Positions 2,153 to 64,000 of a stretch of DNA of 64,000 bases are shown piece after piece; position 1 is the stretch's first letter, and each line of letters begins with the position of its first letter. This DNA comes from Macrostomum lignano. Lineage: Eukaryota. The notes below the pieces were generated by a model. The model saw only the letters and a list, made by a program, of their open reading frames with translations, was not told the origin of the DNA and did not search any database. The DNA lies in the NCBI GenBank assembly GCA_002269645.1, contig NIVC01002117.1, positions 61,886-125,885 on the forward strand, given 5' to 3'. The position numbers were made by a program, and so were the translations under genes.

Positions 2153-2202
2153 TTAGGGTTAGGTTAGGGTTAGGGTTAGGGTTAGGCTAGGGTTAGGGTT
2201 AG
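2153..2202 (+). repeat. Interstitial degenerate (TTAGGG)n tract
   Basis: About 8 TTAGGG/variant units; same tract at 8672-8721, 53052-53085 and inverted at about 19223-19267, always in the element's 3' module. Confidence 0.9.
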
Positions 2203-2423
2203 AAGGTTGACAGATATTTTTAGATTTCCAAGGCTTATTGGGGGCATTGCTGAGATGTCAAGGGGGGAAGTTGATATGTTAAAGCTTGTGGGGGGATAAC
2301 TGACATGTCAAGGCTTACAAGGTTTGACAGGAGATTTTTTAAGATTTCAAGGATACATGTAGCTTATTAAAAAAACGTGTATTGCATTTCTTTGGCTCCC
2401 CAACGGGGGGCGTAGATTGCTAG

Positions 2424-3354
2424 TAGAAACTGACTGTGTGGATTCTATTACCACCCCATAGACACTGACTGTGTGGATTCTAGCACCCCATAGACACTGA
2501 CTGTGTGGATTCTACAACACCATAGACACTGACTGTGTGGATTCTACCACCCCATAGACACTGACTGTGTGGATTCTACCACACCATAGAAACTGACTGT
2601 GTGGATTCTACCACCCCATAGACACTGACTGTGTGGATTCTACCACACCATAGACACTGACTGTGTGGATTCTACCACCCCATAGACACTGACTGTGTGG
2701 ATTCTACCACACCATAGAAACTGACTGTGTGGATTCTACCACCCCATAGACACTGACTGTGTGGATTCTACCACCCCATAGACACTGACTGTGTGGATTC
2801 TACCACACCATAGAAACTGACTGTGTGGATTCTACCACCCCATAGACACTGACTGTGTGGATTCTACCACCCCATAGACACTGACTGTGTGGATTCTACC
2901 ACCCCATAGACACTGACTGTGTGGATTCTACCACCCCATAGAAACTGACTGTGTGGATTCTACCACACCATAGACACTGACTGTGTGGATTCTACCACCC
3001 CATAGACACTGACTGTGTGGATTCTACCACACCATAGACACTGACTGTGTGGATTCTACCACCCCATAGAAACTGACTGTGTGGATTCTACCACCCCATA
3101 GACACTGACTGTGTGGATTCTACCACACCATAGACACTGACTGTGTGGATTCTACCACCCCATAGACACTGACTGTGTGAATTCTACCACCCCATAGAAA
3201 CTGACTGTGTGGATTCTACCACCCCATAGACACTGACTGTGTGGATTCTACCACACCATAGACACTGACTGTGTGGATTCTACCACACCATAGACACTGA
3301 CTGTGTGGATTATACCACACCATAGACACTGACTGTGTGAATTCTACCACCCCA
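2424..3354 (+). repeat. 32-bp minisatellite (CATAGACACTGACTGTGTGGATTCTACCACCC)
   Basis: Tandem 32-bp units read directly. Confidence 0.97.
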
Positions 3355-8942: not shown

Positions 8943-10984
8943 TAGAAACTGACTGTGTGGATTCTATTACCACCCCATAGACACTGACTGTGTGGATTCT
9001 AGCACCCCATAGACACTGACTGTGTGGATTCTACAACACCATAGACACTGACTGTGTGGATTCTACCACCCCATAGACACTGACTGTGTGGATTCTACCA
9101 CACCATAGAAACTGACTGTGTGGATTCTACCACCCCATAGACACTGACTGTGTGGATTCTACCACACCATAGACACTGACTGTGTGGATTCTACCACCCC
9201 ATAGACACTGACTGTGTGGATTCTACCACACCATAGAAACTGACTGTGTGGATTCTACCACCCCATAGACACTGACTGTGTGGATTCTACCACCCCATAG
9301 ACACTGACTGTGTGGATTCTACCACACCATAGAAACTGACTGTGTGGATTCTACCACCCCATAGACACTGACTGTGTGGATTCTACCACCCCATAGACAC
9401 TGACTGTGTGGATTCTACCACCCCATAGACACTGACTGTGTGGATTCTACCACCCCATAGAAACTGACTGTGTGGATTCTACCACACCATAGACACTGAC
9501 TGTGTGGATTCTACCACCCCATAGACACTGACTGTGTGGATTCTACCACACCATAGACACTGACTGTGTGGATTCTACCACCCCATAGAAACTGACTGTG
9601 TGGATTCTACCACCCCATAGACACTGACTGTGTGGATTCTACCACACCATAGACACTGACTGTGTGGATTCTACCACCCCATAGACACTGACTGTGTGGA
9701 TTCTACCACACCATAGACACTGACTGTGTGGATTCTACCACACCATAGACACTGACTGTGTGGATTATACCACACCATAGACACTGACTGTGTGAATTCT
9801 ACCACCCCATAGAAACTGACTGTGTGGATTCTACCACACCATAGACACTGACTGTGTGGATTCTACCACCCCATAGACACTGACTGTGTGGATTCTACCA
9901 CACCATAGAAACTGACTGTGTGGATTCTACCACCCCATAGACACTGACTGTGTGGATTCTACCACCCCATAGACACTGACTGTGTGGATTCTACCACACC
10001 ATAGAAACTGACTGTGTGGATTCTACCACCCCATAGACACTGACTGTGTGGATTCTACCACCCCATAGACACTGACTGTGTGGATTCTACCACCCCATAG
10101 ACACTGACTGTGTGGATTCTACCACCCCATAGAAACTGACTGTGTGGATTCTACCACACCATAGACACTGACTGTGTGGATTCTACCACCCCATAGACAC
10201 TGACTGTGTGGATTCTACCACACCATAGACACTGACTGTGTGGATTCTACCACCCCATAGAAACTGACTGTGTGGATTCTACCACCCCATAGACACTGAC
10301 TGTGTGGATTCTAACACACCATAGACACTGACTGTGTGGATTCTACCACCCCATAGACACTGACTGTGTGGATTCTACCACACCATAGACACTGACTGTG
10401 TGGATTCTACCACACCATAGACACTGACTGTGTGGATTATACCACACCATAGACACTGACTGTGTGGATTCTACCACCCCATAGAAACTGACTGTGTGGA
10501 TTCTACAACACATAGACACTGACTGTGTGGATTCTACAACACCATAGACACTGATTGTGTGGATTCTACCACACCATAGACACTGACTTTGTGGATTCTA
10601 GCACCCCATAGACACTGACTGTGTGGATTCTACAACACCATAGACACTGACTGTGTGGATTCTACCACACCATAGACACTGACTGTGTGGATTCTACCAC
10701 ACCATAGACACTGACTGTGTGGATTCTACCACACCATAGACACTGACTGTGTGGATTCTACCACACCATAGACACTGACTGTGTGGATTCTACCACACCA
10801 TAGACACTGATTGTGTGGATTCTACCACCCCATAGACACTGACTGTGTGGATTCTACCACACCATAGACACTGACTGTGTGGATTCTACCACCCCATAGA
10901 AACTGACTGTGTGGATTCTACCACCCCATAGACACTGACTGTGTGGTAGCACCATAGACACTGACTGTGTGGATTCTACCACCC
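8943..10984 (+). repeat. 32-bp minisatellite
   Basis: Same unit as 2424-3354. Confidence 0.97.
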
Positions 10985-19002: not shown

Positions 19003-19420
19003 CTAGCAATCAGCGCCCCCCGTTGGGGAGCCAAAATGCAGTACAAGTTTTCTAATAAACTACATGTAGCGTCTCTTTGAAATATACTTTGTAAGCAGTC
19101 CCTTGTAAGCCTTGACATGTCAGCAATTCCCCCCACAAGCCTTAACATATCAACAATTCCCCTCTTGACATTTCAGCGATGTCCCACATAAGCCTTGAAA
19201 TCTTAAAAAATCTGTCAACCTTCTAACCCTAACCCTAGCCTAACCCTAGCCCTAACCCTAACCCTAAAGTATTAACATTTCAGTAATTCTCCCAAGAGTC
19301 ATTATAGCACTACACCATTATAGCGATTCCCTGCAAGCCACAACAACGTAGGGATTCCCAAATGAATCTCTTAATTTCGACATGACGCTTCTTTTATTTT
19401 TACATGACGCTTTTTCTATC
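19003..19420 (-). mobile_element. Solo 3' module of the Helitron-like family
   Basis: Reverse complement matches about 1990-2423 including the TTAGGG tract, the GGCTCCCCAACGGGGG hairpin and terminal CTAG followed by T. Confidence 0.85.
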
Positions 19421-19935
19421 ATTGGAACTCAAAATTCGAGATCAGGCAACCAGGATTTTCGGGACAAATTAAGCCATCCACAGCGCCAACAAGTCATTAA
19501 AAATGTTTTAAAGTAGAGCCAACTACTTTAAGTAGTTAATTTCTTAATCCTATTGATGGAGTGGGCTAAATCCTTGAAAAATATTATATTGAACTTTTTT
19601 TCCAAAACTTTCTTCCTTCCACAACTTGGGCGTTTTATTGTAAGCCGTATTTTGAAATTTCACGGGGAATTACTACTTCCATTTGGGCGTCTGTTTAGAG
19701 TTTTTCGTATAACTTTGCGCTTGGCTAATAATTTATTGATTAACAAAGTTAACTCTCACTTGTCATTCGTTTTCGCTTTCTGTCTATGGCCAAATTAAGC
19801 TAAGAACTAAATAAACATTTTAAATAGGAGGCTCGTGAAGAGCTTTAGAATGATCTGATCTGTGTAGCTGCTATGCGGATATTCACAGTCTTATAACTCA
19901 ACCACCAACCTGAATGGCCTTCGATCCGGACTCAC

Positions 19936-33050: not shown

Positions 33051-33819
<769 letters not shown>

Positions 33820-42760: not shown

Positions 42761-42799
42761 GAACCCTACGGCTCATGGAGTTGACTCAAAAGCTCCTAC

Positions 42800-44461: not shown

Positions 44462-44882
44462 CTGGCAACAGAGAATTCGAGTGTTCGATTAAAAACCCTC
44501 AACAAGATAGAAGAGATGCTGGCAAGTGAAGGCTTTAAGGAGACAAGGTCTAAGCAGGGAACACTGTAGATAAGAAAGTGACATCCACTAAAAAACGGGG
44601 CAGAAGTGGACGAAACTCAGGTAGTAGCCTGGAGTATAGGCGGAGAAGAGCTAGTAGTACCTTCTTGCTCAGGAAGTCAGCGTTGTTATATGATTCAAAC
44701 CCGCAATAATATTGGTAATAGTAACTGCAGGAGGGCTGTGGGCAGGACATGATTGTAAAACTGTTGTGTTCCTGGGTTGCTCCTTTTGGGCAAAGCAAAC
44801 ATGAGATTCCCATTGGAATAGGATACCTAAGATTGCCCCTCTTCAGTGACACCTACGAGGGCATATACTGAATCAGTTCTAC

Positions 44883-45307: not shown

Positions 45308-47644
45308 AGTTACAAGTTACTGGCGAGTCCTGCAACATGGATTTCGGATTGCTTTAGATTCTGCTATGCACTATTAGGACATCTTTGTCAAGATATTATT
45401 TAACATTGAAGAATATAGAATTTATATAAAATTTATAGCCTTAAAACCAATGGATTTTAAGCTTATAATAGATAAAAGTTCAAGAATATTCATGTACTAA
45501 GAAACTAATAGCAACCAATTTAAGTACACTAAAAAAAGTTGATTTACAAAAATTCTATTAAAACACATTCCTAAAGCATGGCTCTAGGTTAAAGATATAA
45601 AAGTAAAATATAGATTAGCAATAAAAAAATAATTTTTTTATAGTAAACAGTAAAGAAAGTTTTTAATTTACATATTATCACTCTTGATGTTGATGTTGAT
45701 ATTAGGCAAAGCCTAATAATGACAATCGCTTAATGTCTCCAAAAAGGTTCTTTAAGACTTTAATTAATACATAAAAAATAATATCATAAAATATTAAAAT
45801 ATACTAAAATGCGTATGGTATATTTTGATAAAAATCCTAGTTAGGTCGGAGCGCAAGCATAGACCGAGATAAGATGCAGTACCCAACCCACCACACATAA
45901 AATGCACAATTTCTGAATTGAAAATGGTGTAGAATAAAAACAGTACGTGCTAGGGACAAACAGTTTGTTAATAACTCATGATTTCTTCCTTCAAAATAGA
46001 AGATCATTACTTAAAATGCTTTACTATCTGGTATCAAGTAGATTGGTTAATACATTATGCCTATCATATAATTAACATATTTGCTTGCTATAAGCAAGAA
46101 TAAGAATATAAGATATAACTATTAGATTAAGAATGGCCTTTTAACAATATTTTAGTGAAATTGATTTGACTTTGATTCCATAAAAAAGGAAATTAACACT
46201 ATAATCTTTGATATGATATGATCAGTATTGTTTTAACTTTCTGAAGTTGTTTAATCTAATAATTTTCTGGCTATTAACTTAATGAGGTCAAACTTTTATA
46301 TAGGCCTAGCAAAAGTTACTACAGTAAAAAGACAAAAACTATTAAATAAATTGATTAACTGTCAGATTTTTCATTAAAGATACTAACAAAATAAAACACT
46401 AAAATATAATATTCAAGCCATCCTGTCTGTTGTACGAAAAACATCATAAATAGACACCGAATCATTAAAAAAATTGCAATGCAGGTGTAAACTCACTACA
46501 GGCGGCTTAGACAAGTACGCGCCTAATTCTGCACTGCAGCACTGTTGCAGAGTTTACTGATAACTTTTCGAGATCTTACGAAATTCAAGTTCCATCCTTA
46601 AATTGAAAGTTTCAAGGATTCACGAAAATAAAAAGAATTGGTTGAATCAAACGATTCAGCTTCGATTATTCGTGAATTAAAACAAAAGCACTCCCACAAT
46701 ATCAGACCGTTGCAAGTAATCATTTTACAGATGCTTTAAATTTCGTTTTTTAGCTGATTGATTCGTTTTTCTCACAGTAAGAAAAGAAAAAATTGTTGAA
46801 TAATAGTGAGTCATTTGGAATAATGCTCAGAAAATCATCATTCGTTCTATTTCTGTCGACAGGGATAAGAATAGCAACTGGGAAATTAAGTGGGGAAACC
46901 CAGAGATAGAAAGTCCATTTAAGGACAAGGGAGAACTGACAAATCGTTAGCTATAGAGAACTCCACACCTTCAGCCTCTTGCACATGGCCCGAGATGCGC
47001 GTCTAGTTGACCTAGTGCCTAAAAATGCACGCTGCTATATTGAATTTTTAGTCGACAAGCAAAATGTGCAGAAAAGTCGAATATCGCGTTATCCAATATA
47101 CTAAATTCTAATATACTAAAAATGAAATGCTTGGTTGCTTGCTTGTAATTGATTTTCTCCCGAACGGCTCAACCGATTTTCTTCAAACTTGCACCATTCG
47201 ATCAGAAATTTTCCCGGGACGGTACATGCATATTGGCTAAGAAATTGCTCAATGTTAAAGGGATTAAATATTCGAAAAACATGATTTTTTGCAAAGGTCA
47301 AGCAGCTCTTTCGACCTGAAATGCATTGTAAGAATGCTAGAGAAAAATCTGACTGGTTGAATTCTGATTCTGAAATAGATTGCATCACAATACACTTTAT
47401 TTATCGTCTGTGTACTGGCTGAATTTGACACTCAATTGAATTGCGTCACAGCTTTGAGGGTGAAAGTATAGTGCAGTACTGAATTTATATTACGTAACCA
47501 TATTGTTAACTTTCATAGACACTGGTACTGACTTGCCTAAGAAATTGATTATGTCATAACTGCTTCGCGTGACTTTTTACTCTACCTGACTTGGTGTGAG
47601 TGTTGAATTATATAAGTGGTACAAATTCACTGATAACTTCGATG

Positions 47645-47703
47645 AGAGCTAGCCTAGAGCTGAGCAGACCAGACTGCTAATGCAGCGACCTGGGTTCGAA
47701 TCT
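47645..47703 (+). other. tRNA-like Pol III A/B-box segment within the Helitron core
   Basis: TAGCCTAGAGC ... GACTGCTAAT ... GGTTCGAATC; related copies at about 3845-3901, 51130-51188, 54222-54280 and 58180-58237; not a full cloverleaf. Confidence 0.55.
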
Positions 47704-47772
47704 AAGTAGTTTAAAAGTAGTAGTGTAAAATTTTTTATTAAAAGCTTTTATTAAAGGACTAAATAAAAACAC

Positions 47773-50700
47773 TTAGATTACTGCACTCGATAAGCTAAGG
47801 ATTATTGCTCTTGGCAAACCAAGGAATACTGCACTCGATAAGCCAAGGATTATTGCTCTTGGCAAACCAAGGATTACTGCACTCGATAAGCCATGGATTA
47901 TTGCTATTAATAAACCAAGGATTACTGCACTCGATAAGCCAAGGATTATTGCTATTAATAAACCATGAATTACTGCACTCGATAAGCCAAGGATTATTGC
48001 TATTAATAAACCAAGGATTACTGCACTCATGAGCCATGGATTATTGCTATTAATAAACCAAGGATTACTGCACTCGATAAGCCAAGGATTATTGCTATTA
48101 ATAAACCAAGGATTACTGCACTCGATAAACCAAGGATTATTGCTATTAATAAACCAAGGATTACTGCACTCGATAAGCCAAGGACTATGGCTATTAATAA
48201 ACCAAGGATTACTGCACTCAATAAACCAAGGACTATTGCTCTTGGCAAACCAAGGATTACTGCACTCGATAAGCCAAGGACTATTGCTCTTGGCAAACCA
48301 AGGATTACTGCACTCGATAAGCCATGGATTATTGCTATTAATAAACCAAGGATTACTGCACTCGATAAGCCAAGGATTATTGCTATTAATAAACTAAGGA
48401 TTACTGCACTCGATAAACCAAGGATTATTGCTATTAATAAACCAAGGATTATGCACTTGGCAAACCAAGGATTACTGCAATCGATAAGCCAAGGATTATT
48501 GCTATTAATAAACCAAGCATTACTGCACTCAATAAACCAAGGACTATTGCTATTAATAAACCAAGGATTACTGCACTCAAAAAACCAAGGACTATTGCTC
48601 TTGGCAAACCAAGGATTACTGCACTCGATAAGCCAAGGATTATTGCTATTAATAAACCAAGGATTACTGCACTCAATAAACCAAGGACTATTGCTATTAA
48701 TAAACCAAGGATTACTGCACTCAATAAACCAAGGACTATTGCTCTTGGCAAACCAAGGATTACTGCACTCGATAAGCCAAGGACTATTGCTCTTGGCAAA
48801 CCAAGGATTACTGCACTCGATAAGCCATGGATTATTGCTATTAATAAACCAAGGATTACTGCACTCGATAAGCCAAGGATTATTGCTATTAATAAACCAA
48901 GGATTACTGCACTCGATAAACCAAGGATTACTGCACTTGGAAAACTAAGGATTACTGCACTCGATAAGCCAAGGATTATTGCTATTAATAAACCAAGGAT
49001 TACTGCACTCAATAAACCAAGGACTATTGCTATTAATAAACCAAGGATTACTGCACTCAATAAACCAAGGACTATTGCTCTTGGCAAACCAAGGATTACT
49101 GCACTCGATAAGCCAAGGACTATTGCTCTTGGCAAACCAAGGATTACTGCACTCGATAAGCCATGGATTATTGCTATTAATAAACCAAGGATTACTGCAC
49201 TCATAAGCCATGGATTATTGCTATTAATAAACCAAGGATTACTGCACTCGATAAGCCAAGGATTATTGCTATTAATAAACCAAGGATTACTGCACTCGAT
49301 AAACCAAGGATTATTGCTATTAATAAACCAAGGATTACTGCACTCGATAAGCCAAGGACTATTGCTATTAATAAACCAAGGATTACTGCACTCAATAAAC
49401 CAAGGACTATTGCTCTTGGCAAACCAAGGATTACTGCACTCGATAAGCCATGGATTATTGCTATTAATAAACCAAGGATTACTGCACTCGATAAGCCAAG
49501 GATTATTGCTATTAATAAACTAAGGATTACTGCACTCGATAAACCAAGGATTATTGCTATTAATAAACCAAGGATTATGCACTTGGCAAACCAAGGATTA
49601 CTGCAATCGATAAGCCAAGGATTATTGCTATTAATAAACCAAGCATTACTGCACTCAATAAACCAAGGACTATTGCTATTAATAAACCAAGGATTACTGC
49701 ACTCAAAAAACCAAGGACTATTGCTCTTGGCAAACCAAGGATTACTGCACTCGATAAGCCAAGGATTATTGCTATTAATAAACCAAGGATTACTGCACTC
49801 AATAAGCCAAGGATTATTGCTATTAATAAACCAAGGATAATTGCACTCGATAAACCAAGGATTATTGCTATTAATAAACCAAGGATTACTGCACTCGATA
49901 AGCCAAGGATTATTGCTATTAATAAACCAAGGATTATGCACTTGGCAAACCAAGGATTACTGCACTCGATAAGCCAAGGACTATTGCTCTTGGCAAACCA
50001 AGGATTACTGCACTCGATAAGCCATGGATTATTGCTATTAATAAACCAAGGATTACTGCACTCGATAAGCCAAGGATTATTGCTATTAATAAACCAAGGA
50101 TTACTGCACTTGATAAGCCAAGGATTATTGCTATTAATAAACCAAGGATTACTGCACTCGATAAACCAAGGATTATGCACTTGGCAAACCAAGGATTACT
50201 GCACTCGATAAGCCAAGGATTATTGCTATTAATAAACCAAGGATTACTGCACTCAATAAACCAAGGACTATTGCTATTAATAAACCAAGGATTACTGCAC
50301 TCAATAAACCAAGGACTATTGCTCTTGGCAAACCAAGGATTACTGCACTCGATAAGCCAAGGACTATTGCTCTTGGCAAACCAAGGATTACTGCACTCGA
50401 TAAGCCATGGATTATTGCTATTAATAAACCAAGGATTACTGCACTCGATAAGCCAAGGATTATTGCTATTAATAAACCAAGGATTACTGCACTCGATAAA
50501 CCAAGGATTATTGCTATTAATAAACCAAGGATTATGCACTTGGCAAACCAAGGATTACTGCACTCGATAAGCCAAGGATTATTGCTATTAATAAACCAAG
50601 GATTACTGCACTCGATAAGGCATGGATTATTGCTATTAATAAACCAAGGATTACTGCACTCGATAAGCCAAGGATTATTGCTATTAATAAACCATGAATT

Positions 50701-50825
50701 ACTGCACTCGATAAGCCAAGGATTATTGCTATTAATAAACCAAGGATTACTGCACTCGATAAGCCATGGATTATTGCTATTAATAAACCAAGGATTACTG
50801 CACTCGATAGCCAAGGATTACTGCG
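47773..50825 (+). repeat. 24-bp satellite, largely alternating CCAAGGATTACTGCACTCGATAAG / CCAAGGATTATTGCTATTAATAAA
   Basis: Read directly. Confidence 0.96.
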
Positions 50826-50859
50826 CTTGATAAGCTTGGCTACATGTATAGGATTATTT

Positions 50860-51085
50860 CTATCCAGGGATGCTTGCTATTTAGGGATTCTTGCTATGTG
50901 CAGGATGCTTGCTATCTGGAAGGATGCTTCTACATTATTTGGGGTATGCTTGCTATCTGCAAGATGCTTGCTATCTGCAAGATGCTTGCTATCTGCAAGA
51001 TGCTTGCTATCTGCAGATGCTTGCTATCTGGGTGGATGCTTGCTAGGAGTATTAGGGGATGCTTGCTACTGGGGGATGCTTGCTG
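50860..51085 (+). repeat. 18-19-bp minisatellite (GATGCTTGCTATCTGGGG family)
   Basis: Also at 57020-57450 and 63325-63885. Confidence 0.9.
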
Positions 51086-51247
51086 TCTTGGGAATATTTT
51101 CTATTTAGGGGTAATGACTAAAATTCATGAGAGCTAGCCTAGAGGTAAACAGACTAAACTGCTAAATGCAGGGACGATGGTTCGAATTTTTAGAGAGTAG
51201 AGTTTTTTTAATTAAAGCCTTTTAACGCCAAGACAAAAAAAATTATG

Positions 51248-52095
51248 GAAGCGTCATGTAAACAATCATACAAGCGTCATGTAAACAATCATAGAAGCGT
51301 CATGTAAAAAATCATAGAAGCGTCATGTAAAAATCATAGAAGCGTCATGTAAAAATCATAGAAGCGTAATGTAAACAATCATAGAAGCGTCATGTTAAAA
51401 TCATAAAAGCGTCATGTAAACAATCTGCAAGCGTCATGTAAACAATCATAGAAGCGTCATGTAAAAAAATCATAGAAGCGTCATGTTAAAATCATAAAAG
51501 CGTCATAAAAAATCATAGAAGCGTCATGCAAGCAATCATAGAAGCGTAATGTAAACAATCATAGAAGCGTCATGTTAAAATCATACAAGCGTCATGTAAA
51601 CAATCATACAAGCGTCATGTAAACAATCATAGAAGCGTCATGTAAACAATCATAGAAGCGTCATGTAAAAATCATAGAAGCGTCATGTAAAAATCATAGA
51701 AGCGTCATGTAAACAATCATAAAAGCGTCATGTAAACAATCATAGAAGCGTCATGTATACAATCATAGAAGCGTCATGTAAACAATCATAGAAGCGTCAT
51801 GTATACAATCATAGAAGCGTCATGTAAACAATCATAGAAGCGTCATGTAAAAATCATAGAAGCGTCATGTAAAAATCATAGAAGCGTCATGTAAAAATCA
51901 TAGAAGCGTCATGTAAAAATCATAGAAGCGTCATGTAAAAAATCATAGAAGCGTCATGTAAAAATCATAAAAGCGTCATGTAAAAAATCATAGAAGCGTC
52001 ATGTAAACAATCATACAAGCGTCATGTAAAAAATCATAGAAGCATCATAGAAGCGTCATGTAAACAAGCATAGAAGCGTCATGAAAAAATTATAG
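51248..52095 (+). repeat. 23-bp satellite (same family as 1-1230)
   Basis: Read directly. Confidence 0.96.
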
Positions 52096-54349
52096 AAGCC
52101 TCATATAAAAACTAATGAAAGTGTGTCATTTAAAAAATTAAGAAGCATCATGGAAGAATGAAAGAAGCGTAACGTAAAAATCAAAAGAAGCGTCATGTCA
52201 GACATGAAAGAAATGTCATATAAAAATTAAATGAAGCTATAGTACAGTGCTGTGCTGGGGAGAATTACTGAGACGTCAAGGCTCACAGAGAATAACTGAG
52301 ATTACAGGGGGGTTTCTGAGATGTTAAAGCAAAAGTCAGAAGCTACTTCAAAGTACATGTACTTTACTTAAGTTTTTTATTGCATTCTTTGTTGGCTTGC
52401 CACGGTGGGGGGGGGCGCTGATAGAAGAAGAGTCATGTAAAAATAAAAGGAGCACTATGTATACATAAAATAAAAGTCATGTCAAAGTTAAAAGATTCAT
52501 TTGGGAATTGCTACGATGTCAAAGCTTGGAGGGAATCGTTATAGTGCTGTGATTCTTAAAGAAGGAATCACTTAAATGCCAAGGCTTAGGGAAGAAGAAT
52601 TGCTGTGATTTCAAGGCTTTAGGTTGGGTGAAAGTTAGGTTTACGTCAGGTTTGGGTTGAGGGTTAGATTTTAGCGCGTTTCAAGGTTAACAGGGGATTT
52701 TTCAGATTTCAAGGTTTATGGGGGGCATCGCTGACATGTCAAGGCTTACGAGGGGAATCTATCTATCTATCTATAGCTGAGATGTCAAGGCTCACGGGGG
52801 AATAAATGAGATGTCAAGGCTAATGTCAGAAGCTACATGTAGTTTATTGGAAAAAAGTTATTACATTATTTGTTGGCTCCTCACGGGAGGGATCGCTGAT
52901 AGAAAAAGCGTAATGTAAAAAAAAAGAAGCTTCATGTCAAAGTTAAGAGATTCATTTGGGAATCCCTACGATGTCGAGGCTTGCAGGGAATCGCTATAAT
53001 GCTGTAGTAGTGCTATAGACTCTTAGAGAGAATTACTGAAATTTCAATGCTTTAGGGTTAAGGTTAGGGTTAGGGTTAGGGTTAGAAAATAGACAGATTT
53101 TTTAAGATTTCAAGGCTTGTGGGAGCATTGCTGAGATGTCAAGGGGGGAGTTGATATGTTAAGGCTTGTGGGGGGGATTGCTGACATGTCAAGGCTTACA
53201 AGGGTACTGGTAGCGTACTGAAGCATACTGGTAGAAGTAGCTCTGAAAGAAGGCAAGTATGGTTGAATTTCAATGTCTGTTATAAAATTCTGCACAAACA
53301 TGTTTTATTGGTACATAAGCCTGGAATTAAAATGAGAATTCGATTCCTAGCCCCCCTCCCTAAGAATTTTTTTTCATTTAAAAGGATTCGTCCCTTGCTT
53401 ATTGGCCACCCGAAGGCCATTTTTTATCAAAAATGATAAAAATAATTTTTATCAAACACGTTGACATATACAGGGCTCTAAACTAAAAACTGTAAAAAGT
53501 TGATAGTTTTGTTTTACATAAAATGCGTTATTAACGATCTCCAAAAATTCCTATTTTAAGCTTAAGCTTAAGAAAAACACTTAAAGTACTCCTGCTAAAA
53601 GGTATATTATATTAGACGAATATTAATTATTTCTGCTCCCCGAAGGGGGGCAAAACTTTAGCTAGTTCCATCCATATACTAAAAATGGTCTGTCGGTATG
53701 TGTGTGTGTGTATGTGTGTGTGTGATCGATTTTAGCAAAAACGGCTCAACCGATTTTCTTCGAACTTGCACTCTTCGATCAGAAATTTTCCCGTGACAGT
53801 ACATGCATCGTGGCTAAGAAATTGCTTGATGCTAAAGGGATTAAATATTCGAAAAACATGCTTTTTTGCAAAGGTCAAGCAGCTCTTTCGACTTGAAATG
53901 CATCGTAAGAATGCTAGCAGAAAAACTGACTGGTTGAATTCTGATTCTGAAATAGATTGCATCACAATACACTTTATTTATCGTCTGTGTACTGGCTGAA
54001 TTTGACACTCAATTGAATTGCGTCACAGCTTTGAGTGTGAAAGCATAGCGCAGTACTGAATTTATATTACGTAACCATATTGTAAACTTTCATAGACACT
54101 GGTACTGACTTGCCTAAGAAATTGATTATGTCATAACTGCTTCGTGAGACTTTTTACTCTACCTGACTTGGTGTGAGTGTTGAATTATATAAGTGGTACA
54201 ACATCACTGATAACTTCGATGAGAGCTAGCCTAGAGCTGAACAGACCAGACTGCTAATGCAGCGACCTAGGTTCGAATCTAAGTAGTTTAAAAGTAGTAG
54301 TGTAAAATTTTTTATTAAAAGGTTTTATTAAAGGACTAAATAAAAACAC

Positions 54350-56900
54350 TTAGATTACTGCACTCGATAAGCCAAGGATTATTGCTATTAATAAACCAAG
54401 GACTACTGCACTCGATAAACCAAGGACTATTGCTCTTGGCAAACCAAGGATTACTGCACTCAAGAAGCCAAGAATTATTGCACTTGGAAAACCAAGGATT
54501 AATGCACTCGATAAACCAAGGACTATTGCTCTTGGCAAACCAAGGATTACTGCACTCAAGAAGCCAAGGATTATTGCTATTAATAAACCAAGGATTACTG
54601 CACTTGGAAAACCAAGGATTACTGCACTCGATAAACCAAGGACTATTGCTCTTGGCAAACCAAGGATTACTGCACTCAAGAAGCCAAGGATTATTGCACT
54701 TGGAAAACCAAGGATTACTGCACTCAATAAACCAAGGACTATTGCACTTGATAGGCCAAAGATTACTGCGCTTGATAAACTAAGGATTATTGCACTTGAT
54801 AAACCAAGGATTATTGCACTTGATAAGCCAAGGATTACTGCGCTTGATAAACCAAGGATTATTGCACTTGATAAACAAAGGATTATTGCACTTGATAAAC
54901 AAAGGATTATTGCACTTGATAAACAAAGGATTATTGCACTTGATAAGCCATGGATTATTGCACTTGATAGTAAAGAATGTTGCACTTGATAAGCCAAGGA
55001 TTAATGCACTGGATTATTCAAGGATTATTGATATTAATAAACCAAGGACTACTGCACTCGATAAACCAAGGATTATTGCTCTTAATAAACCAAAGATTAC
55101 TGCACTTGGAAAAATAAGGATTACTGCACTCGATAAACCAAAGACTATTGCACTTGATAAACCAAGGATTATTGCACTTGATAGGCCAAGGATTACTGCG
55201 CTTGATAAACCAAGGATTATTGCACTTGATAAACAAAGGATTATTGCACTTGATAAACCAAGGATTATTGCACTTGATAAGCCAAGGATTATTGCACTTG
55301 ATAAGCCATGGATTATTGCACTTGATAGTAAAGAATGTTGCACTTGATAAGCCAAGGATTAATGCACTAGATTATTCAAGGATTATTGATATTAATAAAC
55401 CAAGGACTACTGCACTCGATAAACCAAGGATTATTGCTCTTAATAAACCAAGGATTACTGCACTTGGAAAACTAAGGATTACTGCACTCGATAAACCAAA
55501 GACTATTGCACTTGATAAACCAAGGATTATTGCACTTGATAGGCCAAGGATTACTGCACTTGATAAACCAAGGATTATTGCACTTGATAAGCCAAGGATT
55601 ATTGCACTTGATAAGCCAAGGATTATTGCACTTGATAAACCAAGGATTATTGCAGTTGATAAGCCAAGGATTATTGCATCTGATAAACCAAAGATTATTG
55701 CACTTGATAAACCAAGGATTATTGCACTTGATAAACCAAGGATTATTGCACTTGATAGGCCAAAGATTACTGCGCTTGATAAACCAAGGATTATTGCACT
55801 TGATAAACCAAGGATTATTGCAGTTGATAAGCCAAGGATTATTGCATCTGATAAACCAAGGATTATTGCAGTTGATAAGCCAAGGATTATTGCATCTGAT
55901 AAACCAAGGATTATTGCACTTGATAAACCAAGGATTATTGCACTTGATAAACCAAGGATTATTGCACTTGATAAACCAAGGATTATTGCTCTTGGCAAAC
56001 CAAGGATTACTGCACTCGATAAGCCAAGGATTATTGCTCTTAATAAACCAAGGATTACTGCACTTGGAAAACTAAGGATTACTGCACTCGATAAACTAAG
56101 GATTATTGCTCTTGGCAAACCAAGGATTATTGCACTTGATAGGCCAAGGATTACTGCACTTGATAAACCAAGGATTATTGCACTTGATAAACCAAGGATT
56201 ATTGCACTTGATAAGCCAAGGATTATTGCACTTGATAGGCCAAGGATTACTGCGCTTGATAAACCAAGGACTATTGCACTTGATAAACCAAGGATTATTG
56301 CAGTTGATAAGCCAAGGATTATTGCACTTGATAAACCAAGGATTATTGCACTTGATAAACCAAGGATTATTGCACTTGATAAACCAAGGATTATTGCACT
56401 TGATAGGCCAAGGATTACTGCACTTGATAAACCAAGGATTATTGCACTTGATAGGCCAAAGATTACTGCGCTTGATAAACCAAGGATTATTGCAGTTGAT
56501 AAGCCAAGGATTATTGCACTTGATAAACCAAGGATTATTTCACTTGATAAACCAAGGATTATTGCACTTGATAAACAAATATTGCACTTGATAAACCAAG
56601 GATTATTGCACCTGATAAGCCAAGGATTACTGCGCTAGATAAACCAAGGATTATTGCACTTGATAAACCAAGGATTATTGCACTTAATAAACCAAGGATT
56701 ATTGCACTTGATAAACCAAGGATTATTGCACTTGATAAACAAAGGATTATTGCACTTGATAAACCAAGGATTATTGCACTTGATAAGCCAAAGATTACTG
56801 CACTTGATAAACCAAGGATTATTGCACTTGATAAACCAAGGATTATTGCACTTGATTAATCAAGGATTATTGCTATTAATAAACCAAGGATTATTGCACT
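54350..56900 (+). repeat. 24-bp satellite, shifting to monomer CCAAGGATTATTGCACTTGATAAA
   Basis: Read directly; includes a ~360-bp internal duplication (about 54970 and 55330). Confidence 0.96.
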
Positions 56901-57019
56901 AGCTGAGAAGCTGATTACTGCGCTGTCTAAAAAAGAGATTATTGCGCTCGCTGAGACGTGGATTGTTGCACAACCTGAGAAAGCGATTATTGCATTAGCG
57001 GAAGTAACATTTGCACTAG

Positions 57020-57450
57020 CTACTTGCTGTCTCGTGGATGCTTGCTCTCGAGGGGGGATACTTGCTATTTGGGAGAGGGGTACTGGCTACATGCATGGGA
57101 TTCTTTCTATCCAGGGATGCTTGCTATTCAGGGATTCTTGCTATCTGCAGGATGCTTGCTATTTAGGGATTCTTGCTATCTGCAGGATGCTTGCTATCTG
57201 GGTGGATGCTTCTATAATATCTGGGGGGTGCTTGCTATCTGCAGGATGCTTCTATAATATCTGGGGGTGCTTGATATCTGCAGAATGCTTGCTATCTGAG
57301 TGGATGCTTGCTATCTGGGTGGATGCTTCTATAATATCTGGGGGGTGCTTGCTAATCTGCAGATGCTTGCTATCTGTGGTGATTCTTGCTATGAGCATTA
57401 GAGGATGCTTGCTATCTGCGATTGTTCACTTTTGGAGGGGGTTGCTTGCT
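57020..57450 (+). repeat. 18-19-bp GATGCTTGCTATCT minisatellite
   Basis: Read directly. Confidence 0.9.
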
Positions 57451-58304
57451 GTCTTGGGAATATTTTCTATTTAGTGAAACGATATTTTGTTGACTGTTTG
57501 TTAATTTTAGAGAAAAAGTGATTTTTTAATTTTGCAAACATCTTAGTCCGTGACAATTTTACACGAATAAGGTGATTTTTAAAATGTGAAGAAGGAATTA
57601 GTGTTTAAGAAAATGTGTTTTTTTATTGTTTTCCATGAACTATTTTTGCTCCTTTCTTATTGGGCGCCCCGAAGGGGGGCCGCACTAGATTGCTAGTCCT
57701 ATATACTAAAAATGAGTTGTCTGTATGTATGTATGTATATGGGTATGCGATTGATTTCAGAAAAAACGGCTCAACCGATTTTCTTCAAACTTGCATCATT
57801 CGATCAGAAATTTTCCTGGCACAGTACATGCATCTTGGCTAAGAAATTGCTCAATGTTAAAGGGATTAAATATTCGAAAAACACGCTTTTTTGCAAAGGT
57901 CAAGCAAAATTTTCGACTTGAAATGCATTGTAAGAATGCTAGAGAAAAAACTGACTGACTGAATTTCAATTCTGATAAAGATTGCATCACAACAAGTTGA
58001 AAACAGTGCCGAAGAAATGCACACACGACTTGATTGAAATTGCGTAACCATATTGCTAACTCGAAGTGAGACTGATACTGGCTGACTGAGAAATTGATTA
58101 TGTCATAACTTTTTACTCCAATTGACTTGCTGTAAGAATTGAATTATAAGGGCCACAATTCATGTTCTCCAATTGAAAAGAGATAGCCCTGATGCGAACA
58201 GACTGGAATGCTAATGTAGCGACCTGGGTTCGAGTCTTAGAAGCGCAAAATAATTTTTTTATTAAAACACCTTAAAAACTAAAAAACTGCTAAACATAAA
58301 AAAG

Positions 58305-61300
58305 CGCAATAGAAGAGCCACCATGTCAAACCTAAAGGAGCCACCATGTCGAACATTAAAGAACCACCATGTCGAACATAAAAGAGCCACCATATCGAAC
58401 ATAAAAGAGTTACCATGTTAAAAATTAAAGAGCCACCATGTCGAACATAGAAGAGCCACCATGTCGAACATAGAAGAGCCACCATGTCAAACATTAAAGA
58501 GCCACCATATCAAACATAAAAGAGTTACCATGTCAAACATTAAAGAGCCACATTGTCAAGCATTAAAGACCCACCATTTCAAACCTAAAATAGTTACCAT
58601 GTCAAACATTCAATAGCCACCATGTCAAACATTAAAGAGCCACCATGTCGAACATAAAAGAGCCACCATATTAAACATAAAAGAGTTACCATGTCAAACA
58701 TTAAAGAGCCACCATGTCGAACATTAAAGAGCCACCATGTCAAACATTAAAGAGCCACATTGTCAAGCATTAAAGACCCACCATTTCAAACCTAAAAGAG
58801 CCACCATGTCAAACATTAAAGAGCCACCATGTCGAACATTAAAGAGCCACCTTGTCAAATAAAGAGCCACCATTCGAAACCTAAAGAAGCCACCATGTCG
58901 AACATAGAAAGCCACCATGTCAAACATTAAAGAGTCACCATGTCAAACATTAAAGAGCCACCGTTTCAAACCTAAAAGAGCCACCATGTTAAAAATTAAA
59001 GAGCCACCATGTCAAACATAAAACAGACACCATTAAGAACATTAAAGAGCCACCATGTCAAATATAAAACAGCCACCATTTCGAAAATTAAGGAGCCACC
59101 ATTTCAAAAATTTAAGAGCCGCTATGTTAAACATTAAAGGGCCACCTTGTCAAATATTAAAGAGCCACCATTTCAAACCTAAAAGAGCGACCCTGTCGAA
59201 CATACAAGAGCCACCATGTCGAACATAAAAGAGCCACCATGTCGAACATACAAGAGCCACCATGTCGAACATAGAAAAGCCACCATGTCGAACATAGAAA
59301 AGCCACCATGTTAAACATTAAAGAGCCAATATTTCAAACCTAAAGGAGCCACCATGTCAAACATTAAAGAGCCACCGGTTCAAACCTAAAAGAGCCACCA
59401 TGTCGAACATTAAAGAGCCACCATGTCAAACATAAAACAGACACCATGTCAAACATTAAAGAGCCACCATGTCAAACATTAAAGAGCCACCGGTTCAAAC
59501 CTAAAAGAGCCACCATGTCGAACATTAAAAAGCCACCATGTCAAACATTAAAGAGCCACATTGTCAAACATTAAAAAGCCACCATTTCAAACCTAAAAGA
59601 GCCACCATGTCAAACATTAAAGAGCCACCATGTCAAACATTAAAGAGCCACCTTGTCAAATATTAAAGAGCCACCATTTCAAACCTAAAGAAGCCACCAT
59701 GTCGAACATACAAGAGCCACCATGTCAAACATTAAAGAGCCACCATATCAAACATAAAAGAGTTACCATGTCAAACATTAAAGAGCCACCATGTCAAACA
59801 TTAAAGAGCCACCATGTCGAACATAAAAGAGCCACCATATCAAACATAAAAGAGTTACCATGTCAAACATTAAAGAGCCACCATGTCGAACATTAAAGAG
59901 CCACCATGTCAAACATTAAAGAGCCACCTTGTCAAATATTAAAGAGCCACCATGTCGAACATAAAAGAGCCACCATATCAAACATAAAAGAGTTACCATG
60001 TCAAACATTAAAGAGCCACATTGTCAAGCATTAAAGACCCACCATTTCAAACCTAAAATAGTTACCATGTCAAACATTCAATAGCCACCATGTCAAACAT
60101 TAAAGAGCCACCATGTCGAACATTAAAGAGCCACCATGTCAAACATTAAAGAGCCACATTGTCAAGCATTAAAGACCCACCATTTCAAACCTAAAAGAGC
60201 CACCATGTCAAACATTAAAGAGCCACCATGTCGAACATTAAAGAGCCACCTTGTCAAATATTAAAGAGCCACCATTTCAAACCTAAAGAAGCCACCATGT
60301 CGAACATACAAGAGCCACCATGTCGAACATAGAAAAGCCACCATGTCAAACATTAAAGAGTCACCATGTCAAACATTAAAGAGCCACCGTTTCAAACCTA
60401 AAAGAGCCACCATGTTAAAAATTAAAGAGCCACCATGTCAAACATAAAACAGACACCATTAAGAACATTAAAGAGCCACCATGTCAAATATAAAACAGCC
60501 ACCATTTCGAAAATTAAGGAGCCACCATTTCAAAAATTTAAGAGCCGCTATGTTAAACATTAAAGGGCCACCTTGTCAAATATTAAAGAGCCACCATTTC
60601 AAACCTAAAAGAGCGACCCTGTCGAACATACAAGAGCCACCATGTCGAACATAAAAGAGCCACCATGTCGAACATACAAGAGCCACCATGTCGAACATAG
60701 AAAAGCCACCATGTCGAACATAGAAAAGCCACCATGTTAAACATTAAAGAGCCAATATTTCAAACCTAAAGGAGCCACCATGTCGAACATAAAAGAGTCA
60801 CCATGTTAAAAATTAAAGAGCCACCATGTCGAACATTAAAGAGCCACCATTTCAAACATTAAAGAGCCACCATGTCAAACATTAAAGAGCCACCGGTTCA
60901 AACCTAAAAGAGCCACCATGTCGAACATTAAAGAGCCACCATGTCAAACATAAAACAGACACCATGTCAAACATTAAAGAGCCACCATGTCAAACATTAA
61001 AGAGCCACCGGTTCAAACCTAAAAGAGCCACCATGTCGAACATTAAAAAGCCACCATGTCAAACATTAAAGAGCCACATTGTCAAACATTAAAAAGCCAC
61101 CATTTCAAACCTAAAAGAGCCACCATGTCAAACATTAAAGAGCCACCATGTCAAACATTAAAGAGCCACCTTGTCAAATTTAAAGAGCCACCATTTCAAA
61201 CCTAAAGAAGCCACCATGTCGAACATACAAGAGCCACCATGTCGAACATTAAAGAGCCACCATATCAAACATAAAAGAGTTACCATGTCAAACATTAAAG

Positions 61301-63230
61301 AGCCACCATGTCAAACATTAAAGAGCCACCATGTCGAACATAAAAGAGCCACCATATCAAACATAAAAGAGTTACCATGTCAAACATTAAAGAGCCACCA
61401 TGTCGAACATTAAAGAGCCACCATGTCAAACATTAAAGAGCCACCTTGTCAAATATTAAAGAGCCACCATTTCAAACCTAAAAGAGCCACCATGTCGAAC
61501 ATTAAAGAGCCACCTTGTCAAATATTAAAGAGCCACCATTTCAAACCTAAAGAAGCCACCATGTCGAACATACAAGAGCCACCATGTCGAACATAAAAGA
61601 GCCACCATATCAAACATAAAAGAGTTACCATGTTAAAAATTAAAGAGCCACCATGTCGAACATAAAAGAGCAACCATGTCAAACATAAAACAGACACCAT
61701 TAAGAACATTAAAGAGCCACCATGTCAAATATAAAACAGCCACCATTTCGAAAATTTAAGAGCCGCCATGTTAAACATTAAAGGGCCACCTTGTCAAATA
61801 TTAAAGAGCCACCATTTCAAACCTAAAAGAGCGACCCTGTCGAACATACAAGAGCCACAATGTCGAACATAAAAGAGCAGCTATGTAGAACATAAAAGAG
61901 CCACCATGTCAAACATAAAAAAGCCACCATGTCAAACATAAAAGAGCCAACATGAAGAACATTAAAGAGCCACCATGTCGACCATTAAAAGAGCCACCAT
62001 GTCGAACATACAAGAGCCACCATGTCGAACATAGAAAAGCCACCATGTCGAACATAGAAAAGCCACCATGTTAAACATTAAAGAGCCAATATTTCAAACC
62101 TTAAGGAGCCACCATGTCGAACATAAAAGAGTCACCATGTTAAAAATTAAAGAGCCACCATGTCGAACATTAAAGAGCCACCCTGTCGAACATTAAAGAG
62201 CCACCATGTCAAACATAAAACAGACACCATGTCAAACATTAAAGAGCCACCGGTTCAAACCTAAAAGAGCCACCATGTCGAACATTAAAGAGCCACCTTG
62301 TCAAATATTAAAGAGCCACCATTTCAAACCTAAAGGAGCCACCATGTCGAACATTAAAAAGCCACCATGTCGAACATTAAAAAGCCAACATGTCAAACAT
62401 AAAAGAGCCACCATGTCAAACCTAAAAAAGCCACCATGTCAAACATAGAAGAGCCACCATGTCAAACATAATAGAGCCACCATGTCAAACATTAAAGAGC
62501 CACCATGTCAAACATAGAAGAAGCCACTATGTCAACATAAAAGAGCCACCATGTCGAACATAAAAGAGTCACCATGTTAAAAAATTAAAGAGCCACCATG
62601 TCGAACATTAAAAGCCACCATGTCGAACATTAAAGAGCCACCATGTCGAACATTAAAGAGCCACCATATCAAACATAAAAGAGTTACCATGTCAAACATT
62701 AAAGAGCCACCATGTCGAACATTAAAGAGCCACCATATCAAACATAAAACAGACACCATGTCAAACATTAAAGAGCCACCATGTCGAACATTAAAGAGCC
62801 ACCATGTCAAACATAAAACAGCCACCATTTCGAAAATTAAGGAGCCACCATTTCGAAAATTAAAGAGCCGCCATGTTAACCATTAAAGGGCCACCATGTC
62901 AAACATTAAAGAGCCACCATGTCGAACATAAAAGAGCCACCATGTCGAACATTAAAGAGCCACCATGTCAAACATTAAAGAGCCACCGGTTCAAACCTAA
63001 AAGAGCCACCATGTCGAACATTAAAAAGCCACCGTGTCGAACATAAAAAAGTCAACATGTCAAACATAAAAGAGCCACCATGTCAAACCTAAAAAGCCAC
63101 CATGTCAAACATAGAAGAGCCACCATGTCGAACATAAAAGAGCCACTATGTCAAACATAAAAGAGCCACCATGTCAAACATAGAAGAGCCACTATGTCAA
63201 ACATAAAAGAGCCACCATGTCAAACATTCA
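58305..63230 (+). repeat. 23-bp satellite (AAAGAGCCACCATGTCAAACATT) with higher-order structure
   Basis: About 210 diverged units; variant blocks recur at 59025, 60451 and 61692. Confidence 0.96.
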
Positions 63231-63324
63231 GATATCCAATTTCAAATGTAAAGTATAAAGCGCCATGCCAATTTAAAGAGCCACTATAAAGCTAAGGAAA
63301 TTGTCGCTCTAGCTACTTATTGTC

Positions 63325-63885
63325 TGGTGGATGGTTGCTATTTGGGGATGCTATCTATCTTGGGGATGCTTGCTATTTGGAGGATGCTTGCTTTCTGGGG
63401 GATGCTTGCTATCTGGGGAATGCTTGCTATCTGGGGAATGCTTGCTATCTGGGGATGCTTGCTATCTGGGGGATGTTGCTATCTGGGATGCTTGCTATCT
63501 GGTGGATGCTTGCTATCTGAGGATGCTTGCTATCTGAGTGATGCTTGCTATCTGGGGGATGCTTGCTATCTGGGGTATGCTTGCTATCTGAGGGATGCTT
63601 GCTATCTTGGGGTATGCTTGCTATCTGAGGGATGCTTGCTATCTTGGGGATGCTTGCTATCTGGATGCTTGCTATCTGCGGAATGCTTGCTATCTGGGGA
63701 ATGCTTGCTATCTGGGGGATGTTGCTATCTGGGGGATGCTTGCTATCTGGGGGATGCTTGCTATCTGGGGATGCTTGCTATCTGGAGGATGCTTGCTATC
63801 TTGGGGATGCTTGCTATCTGGGAAATGCTTGCTATCTGGGAGAATGCTTGCTATCTGAGGATGCTTGCTATCTGGGGGATGCTTG
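63325..63885 (+). repeat. 18-19-bp GATGCTTGCTATCT minisatellite
   Basis: Read directly. Confidence 0.92.
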
Positions 63886-64000
63886 TGGTCTTGGGAAGAT
63901 TTCTTATTGCAATTCACTTCATTTGAGCAGTTTGTCTGTTGTCTTTGTGAAGGATTTTTTGGCTGTCTTTTTGTTAATTGTAGAGAACAGAGATTCTATC

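What the first reader, a model, noticed from the sequence alone, without database searches (positions are those of the whole stretch)
47092..64000. Head-to-tail train of Helitron-like elements carrying interchangeable satellite cassettes
Seen: three elements in tandem share a ~600-bp 5' core starting TCC(T/A)ATATACTAAAAATG; the first two end in a GC hairpin plus CTAG. At 57696|57697 the junction is exactly CTAG|TC with nothing between; at 53665-53671 about 5 nt intervene. The cargo after the core differs: 24-bp + 18-bp + 23-bp(a) arrays in element 1; 24-bp + 18-bp in element 2; 23-bp(b) + 18-bp in element 3; 23-bp(a) alone in the copy at 3355. Known: TC...CTAG termini, a subterminal hairpin, A|T targets and tandem concatemers are Helitron hallmarks, and some Helitron derivatives (e.g. 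DINE-1) carry central tandem repeats. Inference: this family acts as a rolling-circle vector with a fixed slot that breeds and disperses several kb-scale satellites; simple read-through would give identical units, so the differing cargo implies serial insertion at termini or recombination.
Basis: partly seen in the sequence, partly recalled or inferred. Interest (0 to 1): 0.85.

Follow-up and report, generated by a model that had tools for sequence, protein, structure and literature searches.

The report
Adjoining Helitron transposons carrying minisatellite arrays
Several non-coding rolling-circle transposons (Helitrons) packed with short tandem repeats sit end to end in an animal genome, which is a clear example of things already described for Helitrons rather than a new kind of element.

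Summary
Three same-strand elements lie at 47092/47107-53665, 53671-57696 and 57697 to the window end. They share a TCC(W)ATATACTAAAAATG 5' end, a variable microsatellite and a ~600-bp core. The first two end in a GC hairpin 12-15 nt before CTAG. The junctions are CTAG|TC (exact) and CTAG-TTCCA-TC.

Related copies elsewhere in the window strengthen the Helitron reading. A full copy (3355-8942) interrupts a 32-bp satellite between A and T with no target duplication. A 5'-truncated solo copy (19421-19003, minus strand) ends at the same hairpin-CTAG|T. HINE/Helentron criteria (subTIRs, TT target) are not met.

- **Slot:** elements 2 and 3 share homologous sequence on both sides of a slot that holds unrelated arrays (24-bp versus 23-bp).
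- **Element 1:** it is a fusion of an element-2-like 5' part and a 3355-type 3' part, with several bypassed pseudo-termini.
- **Arrays:** they expanded independently in place.

Abutting Helitrons, chimeric 3' ends, tandem Helitrons and repeat-carrying Helitron/HINE elements are all published. I rate this a new member of a known kind. No autonomous partner or other genomic copies could be examined, so dispersal of the arrays is untested.

The parts
1..2423 (+). Copy E0, cut by the window start: 23a array, three-unit tail, hairpin 2395-2411, terminal CTAG 2420-2423
   Evidence: 1-3354 is 99.4% identical to 6519-9873.
2424..3354 (+). 32-bp satellite (about 29 monomers). This is the target DNA into which the element inserted, not cargo.
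3355..8942 (+). Full copy E0b: 5' TCCTATATACTAAAAATG (3355-3372), (TA)n about 3380-3392, conserved block about 3410-3650, leader about 3842-3940, 23a array 3981-7813, tail units, hairpin 8914-8930, CTAG 8939-8942
   Evidence: The joined flanks TCTACCACCCCA|TAGAAACTGACT recur 10 times exactly within the 32-bp arrays.
8943..10984 (+). 32-bp satellite (about 64 monomers) continuing in phase after E0b
19003..19421 (-). Solo 5'-truncated copy, equal to one tail unit (U3): 23a-like monomers, (TTAGGG)n, hairpin 19031-19015, GATTGCTAG followed by T
47092..47106 (+). 15-nt partial 5' terminus TCCAATATACTAAAT, preceded by A; origin unresolved
47107..51108 (+). Element 1, part a (element-2-like): terminus 47107-47124, (GCTT)-like microsatellite about 47128-47145, core to 47775, 48/24-bp array 47776-50833, 18-bp array 50860-51088, first 38 nt of tail C
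51109..53665 (+). Element 1, part b (E0b-like 3' part): leader fragment 51127-51236, 23a array 51237-52198, tail units to about 53204, unique 460 bp with a possible degenerate terminus about 53396-53425, hairpin 53634-53652, CTAG 53662-53665
53666..53670 (.). TTCCA spacer between elements 1 and 2; read as residual host DNA (T after CTAG, A before TC)
53671..57696 (+). Element 2: terminus TCCATATACTAAAAATG, (GT)n 53696-53724, core to 54352, 24-bp array 54353-56900 with degenerate edge to about 57000, 18-bp array 57097-57419, tail C 57420-57696, hairpin 57663-57681, CTAG 57693-57696
57697..64000 (+). Element 3, cut by the window end: terminus 57697-57714, (GTAT)n about 57723-57746, divergent core to 58308, 23b array 58309-63227, 18-bp array 63323-63885, start of tail C 63886-64000

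Best explanation
These are copies of one family of non-autonomous, canonical-type Helitrons (rolling-circle DNA transposons) in an unidentified animal genome.

Layout of each copy:
- a 5' TCC(W)ATATACTAAAAATG end;
- a hypervariable microsatellite;
- a ~235-bp strongly conserved block inside a ~600-bp core;
- an A/T-rich 'leader';
- one to three arrays of 18-24-bp repeats, which make up about three quarters of the length;
- a tail ending in a 17-19-nt GC hairpin 12-15 nt before CTAG.

Inferred mechanism, from the established Helitron model:
1. A RepHel transposase supplied in trans nicks at A|TC.
2. It unwinds to the hairpin-CTAG terminator.
3. It circularises the strand.
4. It inserts it between A and T of a target.

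Inferred history of the train: three separate insertions landed within 5 bp of each other in the same orientation. One of them, element 2, used the A|T formed by host A plus the first T of element 3. That produced the exact CTAG|TC joint.

Element 1 is a fusion of an element-2-like 5' part with an E0b-like 3' part. It arose either by terminator bypass into an abutting or 5'-truncated neighbour, or by a deletion across such a pair. Its tail and E0's tail carry a chain of decayed former termini.

The arrays themselves grow and homogenise locally by slippage or unequal exchange. Unequal exchange between flanking 32-bp satellite repeats duplicated a whole element near the window start.

Shown: the anatomy, the A|T insertion, the mosaic and chimeric structure, and the independent array expansion. 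Inferred: the transposase, the order of events, and any targeting of resident 5' ends.
For: Termini:
- The 5' motif occurs 4 times against 0.2 expected.
- Hairpin plus CTAG is found at four distinct 3' ends whose upstream tails are otherwise unrelated.
- T follows CTAG at all four independent ends.
- A precedes TC at 3355, 47092 and 53671.

Empty site: E0b's joined flanks reproduce the 32-bp monomer junction. The 24-mer occurs 10 times exactly and 52 times with up to 1 mismatch, always inside the arrays.

The solo 5'-truncated copy ends at the same terminus.

There are no terminal inverted repeats.

Mosaicism:
- The conserved block is 87-91% identical in every pair.
- The rest of the core is 95-98% between elements 1 and 2.
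- Element 3 is closer to distant E0b (89.7%) than to its neighbour element 2 (75.6%) in one block.

Element 1 is collinear with element 2 up to 51108. It then switches to an E0b-type leader, 23a array and tail.

Tail units U1-U3 each end in a hairpin-like pseudo-terminus.

Array independence is shown.

Published precedent, all (PMC4778049):
- precise TC/CTAG circle joints;
- natural bat Helitrons inserted so that one 5' end abuts another's 3' end;
- insertion next to 5'-truncated copies, giving new 3' ends.
Against: - No autonomous RepHel element is in the window.
- No other genomic copies could be retrieved. Mobility, copy number and the true consensus ends are therefore unverified.
- The empty-site argument has a caveat. 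The second 32-bp array also ends within 1-2 nt of the same monomer phase, and the two element copies there are a recent duplication. It counts as one insertion event.
- The 15-nt partial terminus at 47092 and the TCCA before element 2 are not explained by clean A|T insertions.
- The 5' flank of the terminus at 47107 is T, not A.
- Three insertions within 5 bp require a targeting preference that is not demonstrated here.
Confidence: 0.75

Rival explanations
1. The family belongs to the Helentron side (HINE/DINE-1-like elements mobilised by an endonuclease-bearing RepHel) rather than to canonical Helitrons.
For: - A variable microsatellite lies right after the 5' end, with central tandem repeats and a 3' palindrome. 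This is the DINE-1/HINE and Cg_HINE layout.
- Element 1 has a 9-nt inverted match (TCTAATATA) between its 5' end and a site 49-57 nt from its 3' end.
Against: - No inverted match of 8 nt or more links the 5' end to the 3' ends of E0/E0b or element 2.
- The ends are TC...CTAG.
- The demonstrated target is A|T, not TT, and there are no terminal T runs.
- A P. infestans proto-Helentron shows that A|T/CTAG structure can accompany a Helentron-type protein. The protein partner therefore remains open.
Confidence: 0.12
2. The train began as a local tandem multimer, either a rolling-circle concatemer or the product of unequal crossing-over. The units then diverged by array turnover and gene conversion with dispersed copies.
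For: - Exact CTAG|TC is the joint expected from a circle or concatemer.
- Tandem Helitron arrays are known.
- A whole-element tandem duplication does exist at 1-9873.
Against: - Elements 2 and 3 differ by large indels, 40-79% identity over much of the core, and unrelated first arrays.
- Element 3 is closer to E0b, 44 kb away, than to its neighbour.
- The known local duplication left satellite spacer between its copies, not an exact joint.
- Five host-like bases separate elements 1 and 2.
Confidence: 0.1
3. The arrangement is an assembly artefact: repeat-rich reads from dispersed copies were chained together.
For: About 74% of 47-64 kb is tandem repeat, which is difficult to assemble. No reads were available.
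Against: - The junctions are base-precise and biologically sensible (CTAG|T, A|TC).
- The units are clearly different, so a collapse or expansion error would not create them.
- The same family shows coherent structure at two other places in the window.
Confidence: 0.03

Closest known systems
Bat Helitrons (HelibatN subfamilies) and the reconstructed Helraiser (Grabundzija et al. 2016, PMC4778049)
   Same: - 5' TC, 3' CTAG and a subterminal hairpin.
- A|T integration without duplication.
- Precise TC/CTAG joints.
- Natural copies inserted so that one 5' end abuts another's 3' end, or next to 5'-truncated copies.
- Terminator bypass giving chimeric new 3' ends.
   Different: - No sequence relationship was tested or is expected.
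- Bat elements carry gene and promoter fragments rather than kb-scale minisatellite arrays.
- Transposition here is not demonstrated.
Cg_HINE elements of the Pacific oyster and related DINE-1/HINE, pearl and DTC84 elements (PMC7492417, PMC4067079, PMC10048060)
   Same: - Non-autonomous rolling-circle elements with a 5' microsatellite, central tandem repeats in fixed orientation and a 3' palindrome.
- Related flanks combined with unrelated repeats.
- Sometimes two different arrays in a row.
   Different: - Those have subTIRs and TT targets, which were tested here and not met.
- Their monomers are mostly 140-180 bp in arrays of about 2-10 copies, with up to about 90 reported.
- Here monomers are 18-24 bp, or 48 bp for the two-monomer unit, in arrays of 10-214 copies reaching 4.9 kb.
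Tandem Helitron arrays (Myotis, Pritham & Feschotte 2007; Helitron-1_DPe on the D. pseudoobscura Y, bioRxiv 10.1101/2021.06.02.446622)
   Same: Head-to-tail Helitron copies, detected by 3'-end/5'-end junction queries.
   Different: Those are multimers of one element. Here the adjoining units are different family members with different cargo.

Membership tests
Canonical Helitron (non-autonomous) | 5' terminus begins with TC | tested here: met
   TCCTATATAC / TCTAATATAC / TCCATATAC at 3355, 47107, 53671 and 57697.
Canonical Helitron (non-autonomous) | 3' terminus CTRR (CTAG) | tested here: met
   CTAG at 2423, 8942, 53665, 57696 and 19003(-).
Canonical Helitron (non-autonomous) | GC-rich hairpin about 10-15 nt upstream of the 3' end | tested here: met
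   17-19-nt hairpin GCTCCCC-NNN-GGGGGGC lies 12-15 nt before the end. It is conserved at four ends whose tails otherwise differ. Folding z-scores alone are modest (-0.9 to -1.7).
Canonical Helitron (non-autonomous) | Insertion between A and T with no target-site duplication | tested here: met
   E0b's joined flanks equal the intact 32-bp monomer junction, found 10 times exactly. The 3' flank is T at 4 of 4 independent ends. The 5' flank is A at 3 ends. This rests on one event, and there is a phase caveat.
Canonical Helitron (non-autonomous) | No terminal inverted repeats | tested here: met
   No consistent inverted match between the first 60 nt and the last 150 nt.
Canonical Helitron (non-autonomous) | Autonomous RepHel partner sharing the termini | not testable with these tools
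   No Rep/helicase ORF in the window. The host genome is not in any searchable collection.
Helentron-associated elements (HINE / DINE-1 / Cg_HINE) | 11-15-bp subterminal inverted repeats, 2-4 nt from the 5' end and 38-60 nt from the 3' end | tested here: not met
   Only element 1 has a 9-nt match at the right distance. E0/E0b and element 2 have none of 8 nt or more.
Helentron-associated elements (HINE / DINE-1 / Cg_HINE) | TT / T-rich target with T runs at the boundaries | tested here: not met
   5' flanks are A, and the demonstrated target is A|T.
Helentron-associated elements (HINE / DINE-1 / Cg_HINE) | Microsatellite after the 5' end, central tandem repeats, 3' palindrome | tested here: met
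   (TA)n, (GCTT)n, (GT)n and (GTAT)n follow the 18-nt terminus in the four copies. Arrays and hairpin are as described above.
tRNA-derived SINE (considered for the GGTTCGAAT 'leader') | Recognisable tRNA-related head | tested here: not met
   ARAGORN finds 0 genes. Rfam gives no tRNA match even at E up to 10. Only a B-box-like 9-mer plus a T run is conserved.

The most novel reading that the evidence does not exclude
The family's transposase may preferentially use the A|TC 5' junction of resident family members, or the few bases around it, as its integration target. Unlike members would then be joined head to tail systematically. Terminator bypass would fuse them into ever longer multi-array, multi-terminus composites. 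That would be a built-in route from single Helitrons to higher-order 'satellites of satellites'.
Probability: 0.2. Interest if true: 0.55.

Novelty: new member of a known kind. Interest (0 to 1): 0.3.

Why it matters
This is a compact, base-resolved example of how rolling-circle transposons and tandem repeats build on each other. One 64-kb window shows:
- a clean A|T insertion into a satellite;
- whole-element duplication by exchange between the flanking satellite repeats;
- an exact heterologous CTAG|TC joint;
- a fusion element with a chain of bypassed termini;
- two related elements holding unrelated arrays in the same slot.

If the genome-wide pattern showed a real preference for landing at resident 5' ends, it would give a testable mechanism for how Helitron clusters and new long satellites arise. 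As it stands, each component has published precedent. The value is as a well-annotated case and as a guide for repeat annotation of this genome. These elements would otherwise be masked as anonymous satellites.

Tried and rejected
- **Other copies.** I scanned the metagenome, prokaryote-genome and viral collections with a 20-mer invariant in all four cores. The result was 8 loci, all chance matches of 20-34 nt in bacterial contigs.
- **Host identity.** The best protein match to the kinase exon is only 60% identical, so the species is not in the protein collection. Searches for six element or satellite strings in the literature gave nothing.
- **Is the conserved core coding?** Pfam found nothing. 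The word-indexed search found nothing. The exhaustive HMMER search gave three repetitive proteins whose E-values come from summed weak repeats. I rejected these as evidence.
- **Structured RNA in the conserved block.** 53 pairs were predicted with no compensatory change. Rfam found nothing credible.
- **tRNA or SINE origin of the leader.** Negative.
- **HINE subTIRs.** Not found consistently.
- **Helitron-like ends next to the 16 other arrays.** A generic hairpin-CTAG scan recovered family members (three ends, one of them present twice through the duplication; it missed element 2's end) plus 2 hits. Block shuffles give 3.9 on average.
- **Relatedness of monomers.** 23a and 23b are only weakly related (7 of 300 shuffles). 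24-bp and 23-bp are unrelated. 48A and 18-bp are possibly related.


Full report
**What is there**

The window is eukaryotic. It contains a three-exon Src-family kinase gene on the minus strand, with SH3, SH2 and kinase domains. Its best database match is only 60% identical, so the species could not be named.

TRF lists 73 rows, which correspond to about 28 distinct tandem arrays.

- The 18-nt 5' motif occurs four times on the + strand, against 0.2 expected.
- A ~600-bp core follows each occurrence.
- Elements 1 and 2 end in a GC hairpin 13-15 nt before CTAG.
- The 2/3 junction is exactly CTAG|TCC.
- TTCCA separates elements 1 and 2.

**More family members in the window**

- Copy E0b (3355-8942) is complete.
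- E0 (1-2423) is its 99.4%-identical duplicate, cut by the window start.
- A 420-bp solo fragment on the minus strand (19421-19003) ends in the same hairpin plus GATTGCTAG, followed by T.
- A generic scan for 'GC hairpin, 6-18 nt, CTAG' recovers family ends (it misses element 2's because of a stem mismatch) plus two hits. Shuffles give about four hits on average, so the two extra hits are within chance.

**Helitron or Helentron**

The ends are TC...CTAG. The hairpin is 17-19 nt long and lies 12-15 nt from the end.

T follows CTAG at all four independent 3' ends. A precedes TC at 3355, 47092 and 53671.

E0b sits inside a 32-bp satellite. Joining its flanks (12 + 12 nt) gives TCTACCACCCCA|TAGAAACTGACT. 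This string occurs 10 times exactly and 52 times with up to one mismatch, and only inside the 32-bp arrays. That is an A|T insertion without target duplication.

Two caveats apply to this result:
- The two element copies there are a recent duplication, so this counts as one event.
- The second array happens to end within 1-2 nt of the same monomer phase.

The HINE criteria from Thomas et al. and Vojvoda Zeljko et al. fail on two points:
- There are no consistent subTIRs. Only a 9-nt match exists, in element 1.
- There is no TT target.

The 5' microsatellite is HINE/DINE-1-like. It is (TA)n, (GCTT)n, (GT)n or (GTAT)n in the four copies. The central arrays are also HINE/DINE-1-like.

I therefore file the family as a non-autonomous canonical-type Helitron with a DINE-1-like internal layout. 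The nature of its protein partner is open. A proto-Helentron with A|T/CTAG structure is known.

**Modularity**

A 235-bp block is 87-91% identical in every pair of copies. The rest of the core is 95-98% identical between elements 1 and 2, but only 40-79% in other pairs.

In one block, element 3 is closer to distant E0b (89.7%) than to its neighbour, element 2 (75.6%). Elements 2 and 3 are therefore not a local duplicate or a simple concatemer.

Elements 2 and 3 are nevertheless homologous on both sides of the first array. The GCWCTAGCTACTT..GTGGATG junction matches at 28 of 34 positions. The post-18-bp tail scores 42, against a shuffle maximum of 33.

The arrays they hold between these flanks are unrelated: 24-bp versus 23b. 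The 'slot' is therefore real.

**Element 1 is a composite**

Element 1 is collinear with element 2 up to 51108. It then switches to an E0b-type leader fragment, 23a array and tail. After that comes 460 bp found nowhere else in the window, which contains a possible decayed terminus.

The E0 and element 1 tails consist of three tandem units. Each unit ends in a hairpin-like pseudo-terminus. The solo copy at 19 kb equals one such unit.

This pattern matches published observations in bat Helitrons: insertion next to a 5'-truncated or abutting Helitron, followed by terminator bypass.

**The arrays**

- Element 1's 48/24-bp array contains a 404-bp exact internal duplicate.
- The longest exact match between the arrays of elements 1 and 2 is 52 bp.
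- Element 2's dominant monomer is private to it.
- The two 32-bp arrays flanking the 99.4%-identical duplicated segment differ twofold in length.

Much of the array length therefore arose locally.

Sixteen other short-unit arrays lie between 11 and 44 kb. None has a link to the family.

**How the train most likely arose**

All flanks fit three canonical insertions into a host sequence ...GCGTTA|TTCCA|T...:
- Element 3 has A before it.
- Element 1 lies between A (47091) and T (53666).
- Element 2 lies between A (53670) and the first T of element 3, which gives the exact CTAG|TC joint.

This is an inference. The 15-nt partial terminus at 47092-47106 is left unexplained, and clustering within 5 bp needs some targeting preference.

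**Comparison with the literature**

All of the following are published:
- precise TC/CTAG joints in Helitron circles;
- abutting Helitrons and new chimeric 3' ends;
- tandem Helitron arrays;
- Helitron/Helentron derivatives that combine related flanks with unrelated tandem repeats, sometimes two arrays in a row.

Two things differ here. The monomers are very short (18-24 bp, or 48 bp for the two-monomer unit) and the arrays very long (up to 214 copies and 4.9 kb). Canonical Helitron ends are combined with a DINE-1-like interior.

**Negative results**

- No related DNA was found in the searchable collections.
- There was no coding or RNA signal in the conserved block.
- The leader has no tRNA signature.

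**Verdict**

It overreaches on dispersal and on novelty. I rate this a new member of a known kind, with interest 0.3.

Noticed in passing
1-3354 versus 6519-9873: A ~6.5-kb unit (whole Helitron plus 931 bp of the 32-bp satellite) is tandemly duplicated at 99.4% identity. The 32-bp arrays on either side differ twofold in length. This looks like unequal exchange between the satellite repeats flanking the insertion.
   Followed up: partly
2153-2202, 8672-8721, 53052-53085, 19223-19267 (minus strand): Blocks of 5-8 telomere-type TTAGGG repeats sit inside every longer tail unit of the elements. The family therefore carries interstitial telomeric repeats around the genome.
   Followed up: no
3892-3916, 47693-47701, 51179-51187, 54270-54278, 58227-58235: The 'leader' just upstream of each first array keeps a GGTTCGAAT motif (like a Pol III B box), followed 25-45 nt later by a run of 6-7 T. 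ARAGORN and Rfam find no tRNA. A Pol III-type transcription unit is only a guess.
   Followed up: partly
47092-47106 and 53667-53670: Partial copies of the 5' terminus (15 nt TCCAATATACTAAAT; 4 nt TCCA) lie immediately upstream of the full termini of elements 1 and 2. Clean A|T insertion does not explain them.
   Followed up: partly
3410-3650, 47162-47402, 53739-53979, 57764-58004: A 235-bp block is about equally conserved (87-91%) in all copies, while neighbouring core sequence ranges from 40% to 98%. No protein family, homologue or covarying RNA structure was found. It may be a cis-acting transposition or promoter sequence.
   Followed up: partly
11579-43550: Sixteen further short-unit tandem arrays (7-51-bp units, 0.2-1.2 kb) have no Helitron features nearby. 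They include a 100% pure (GATA)192 at 33051-33819 and two 17-bp arrays of the same monomer 0.8 kb apart (26460-27259, 28076-29030).
   Followed up: partly
41296-45307 (minus strand): A Src-family tyrosine kinase gene in only three exons (SH3, SH2, kinase) has a glutamine-rich N-terminal region. 24-bp and 14-bp minisatellites lie in its introns. The closest database protein is 60% identical.
   Followed up: partly
10984: The second 32-bp array ends against unique DNA within 1-2 nt of the same monomer phase at which the Helitron is inserted. This may be coincidence, or a hint that this phase is a natural array boundary.
   Followed up: no
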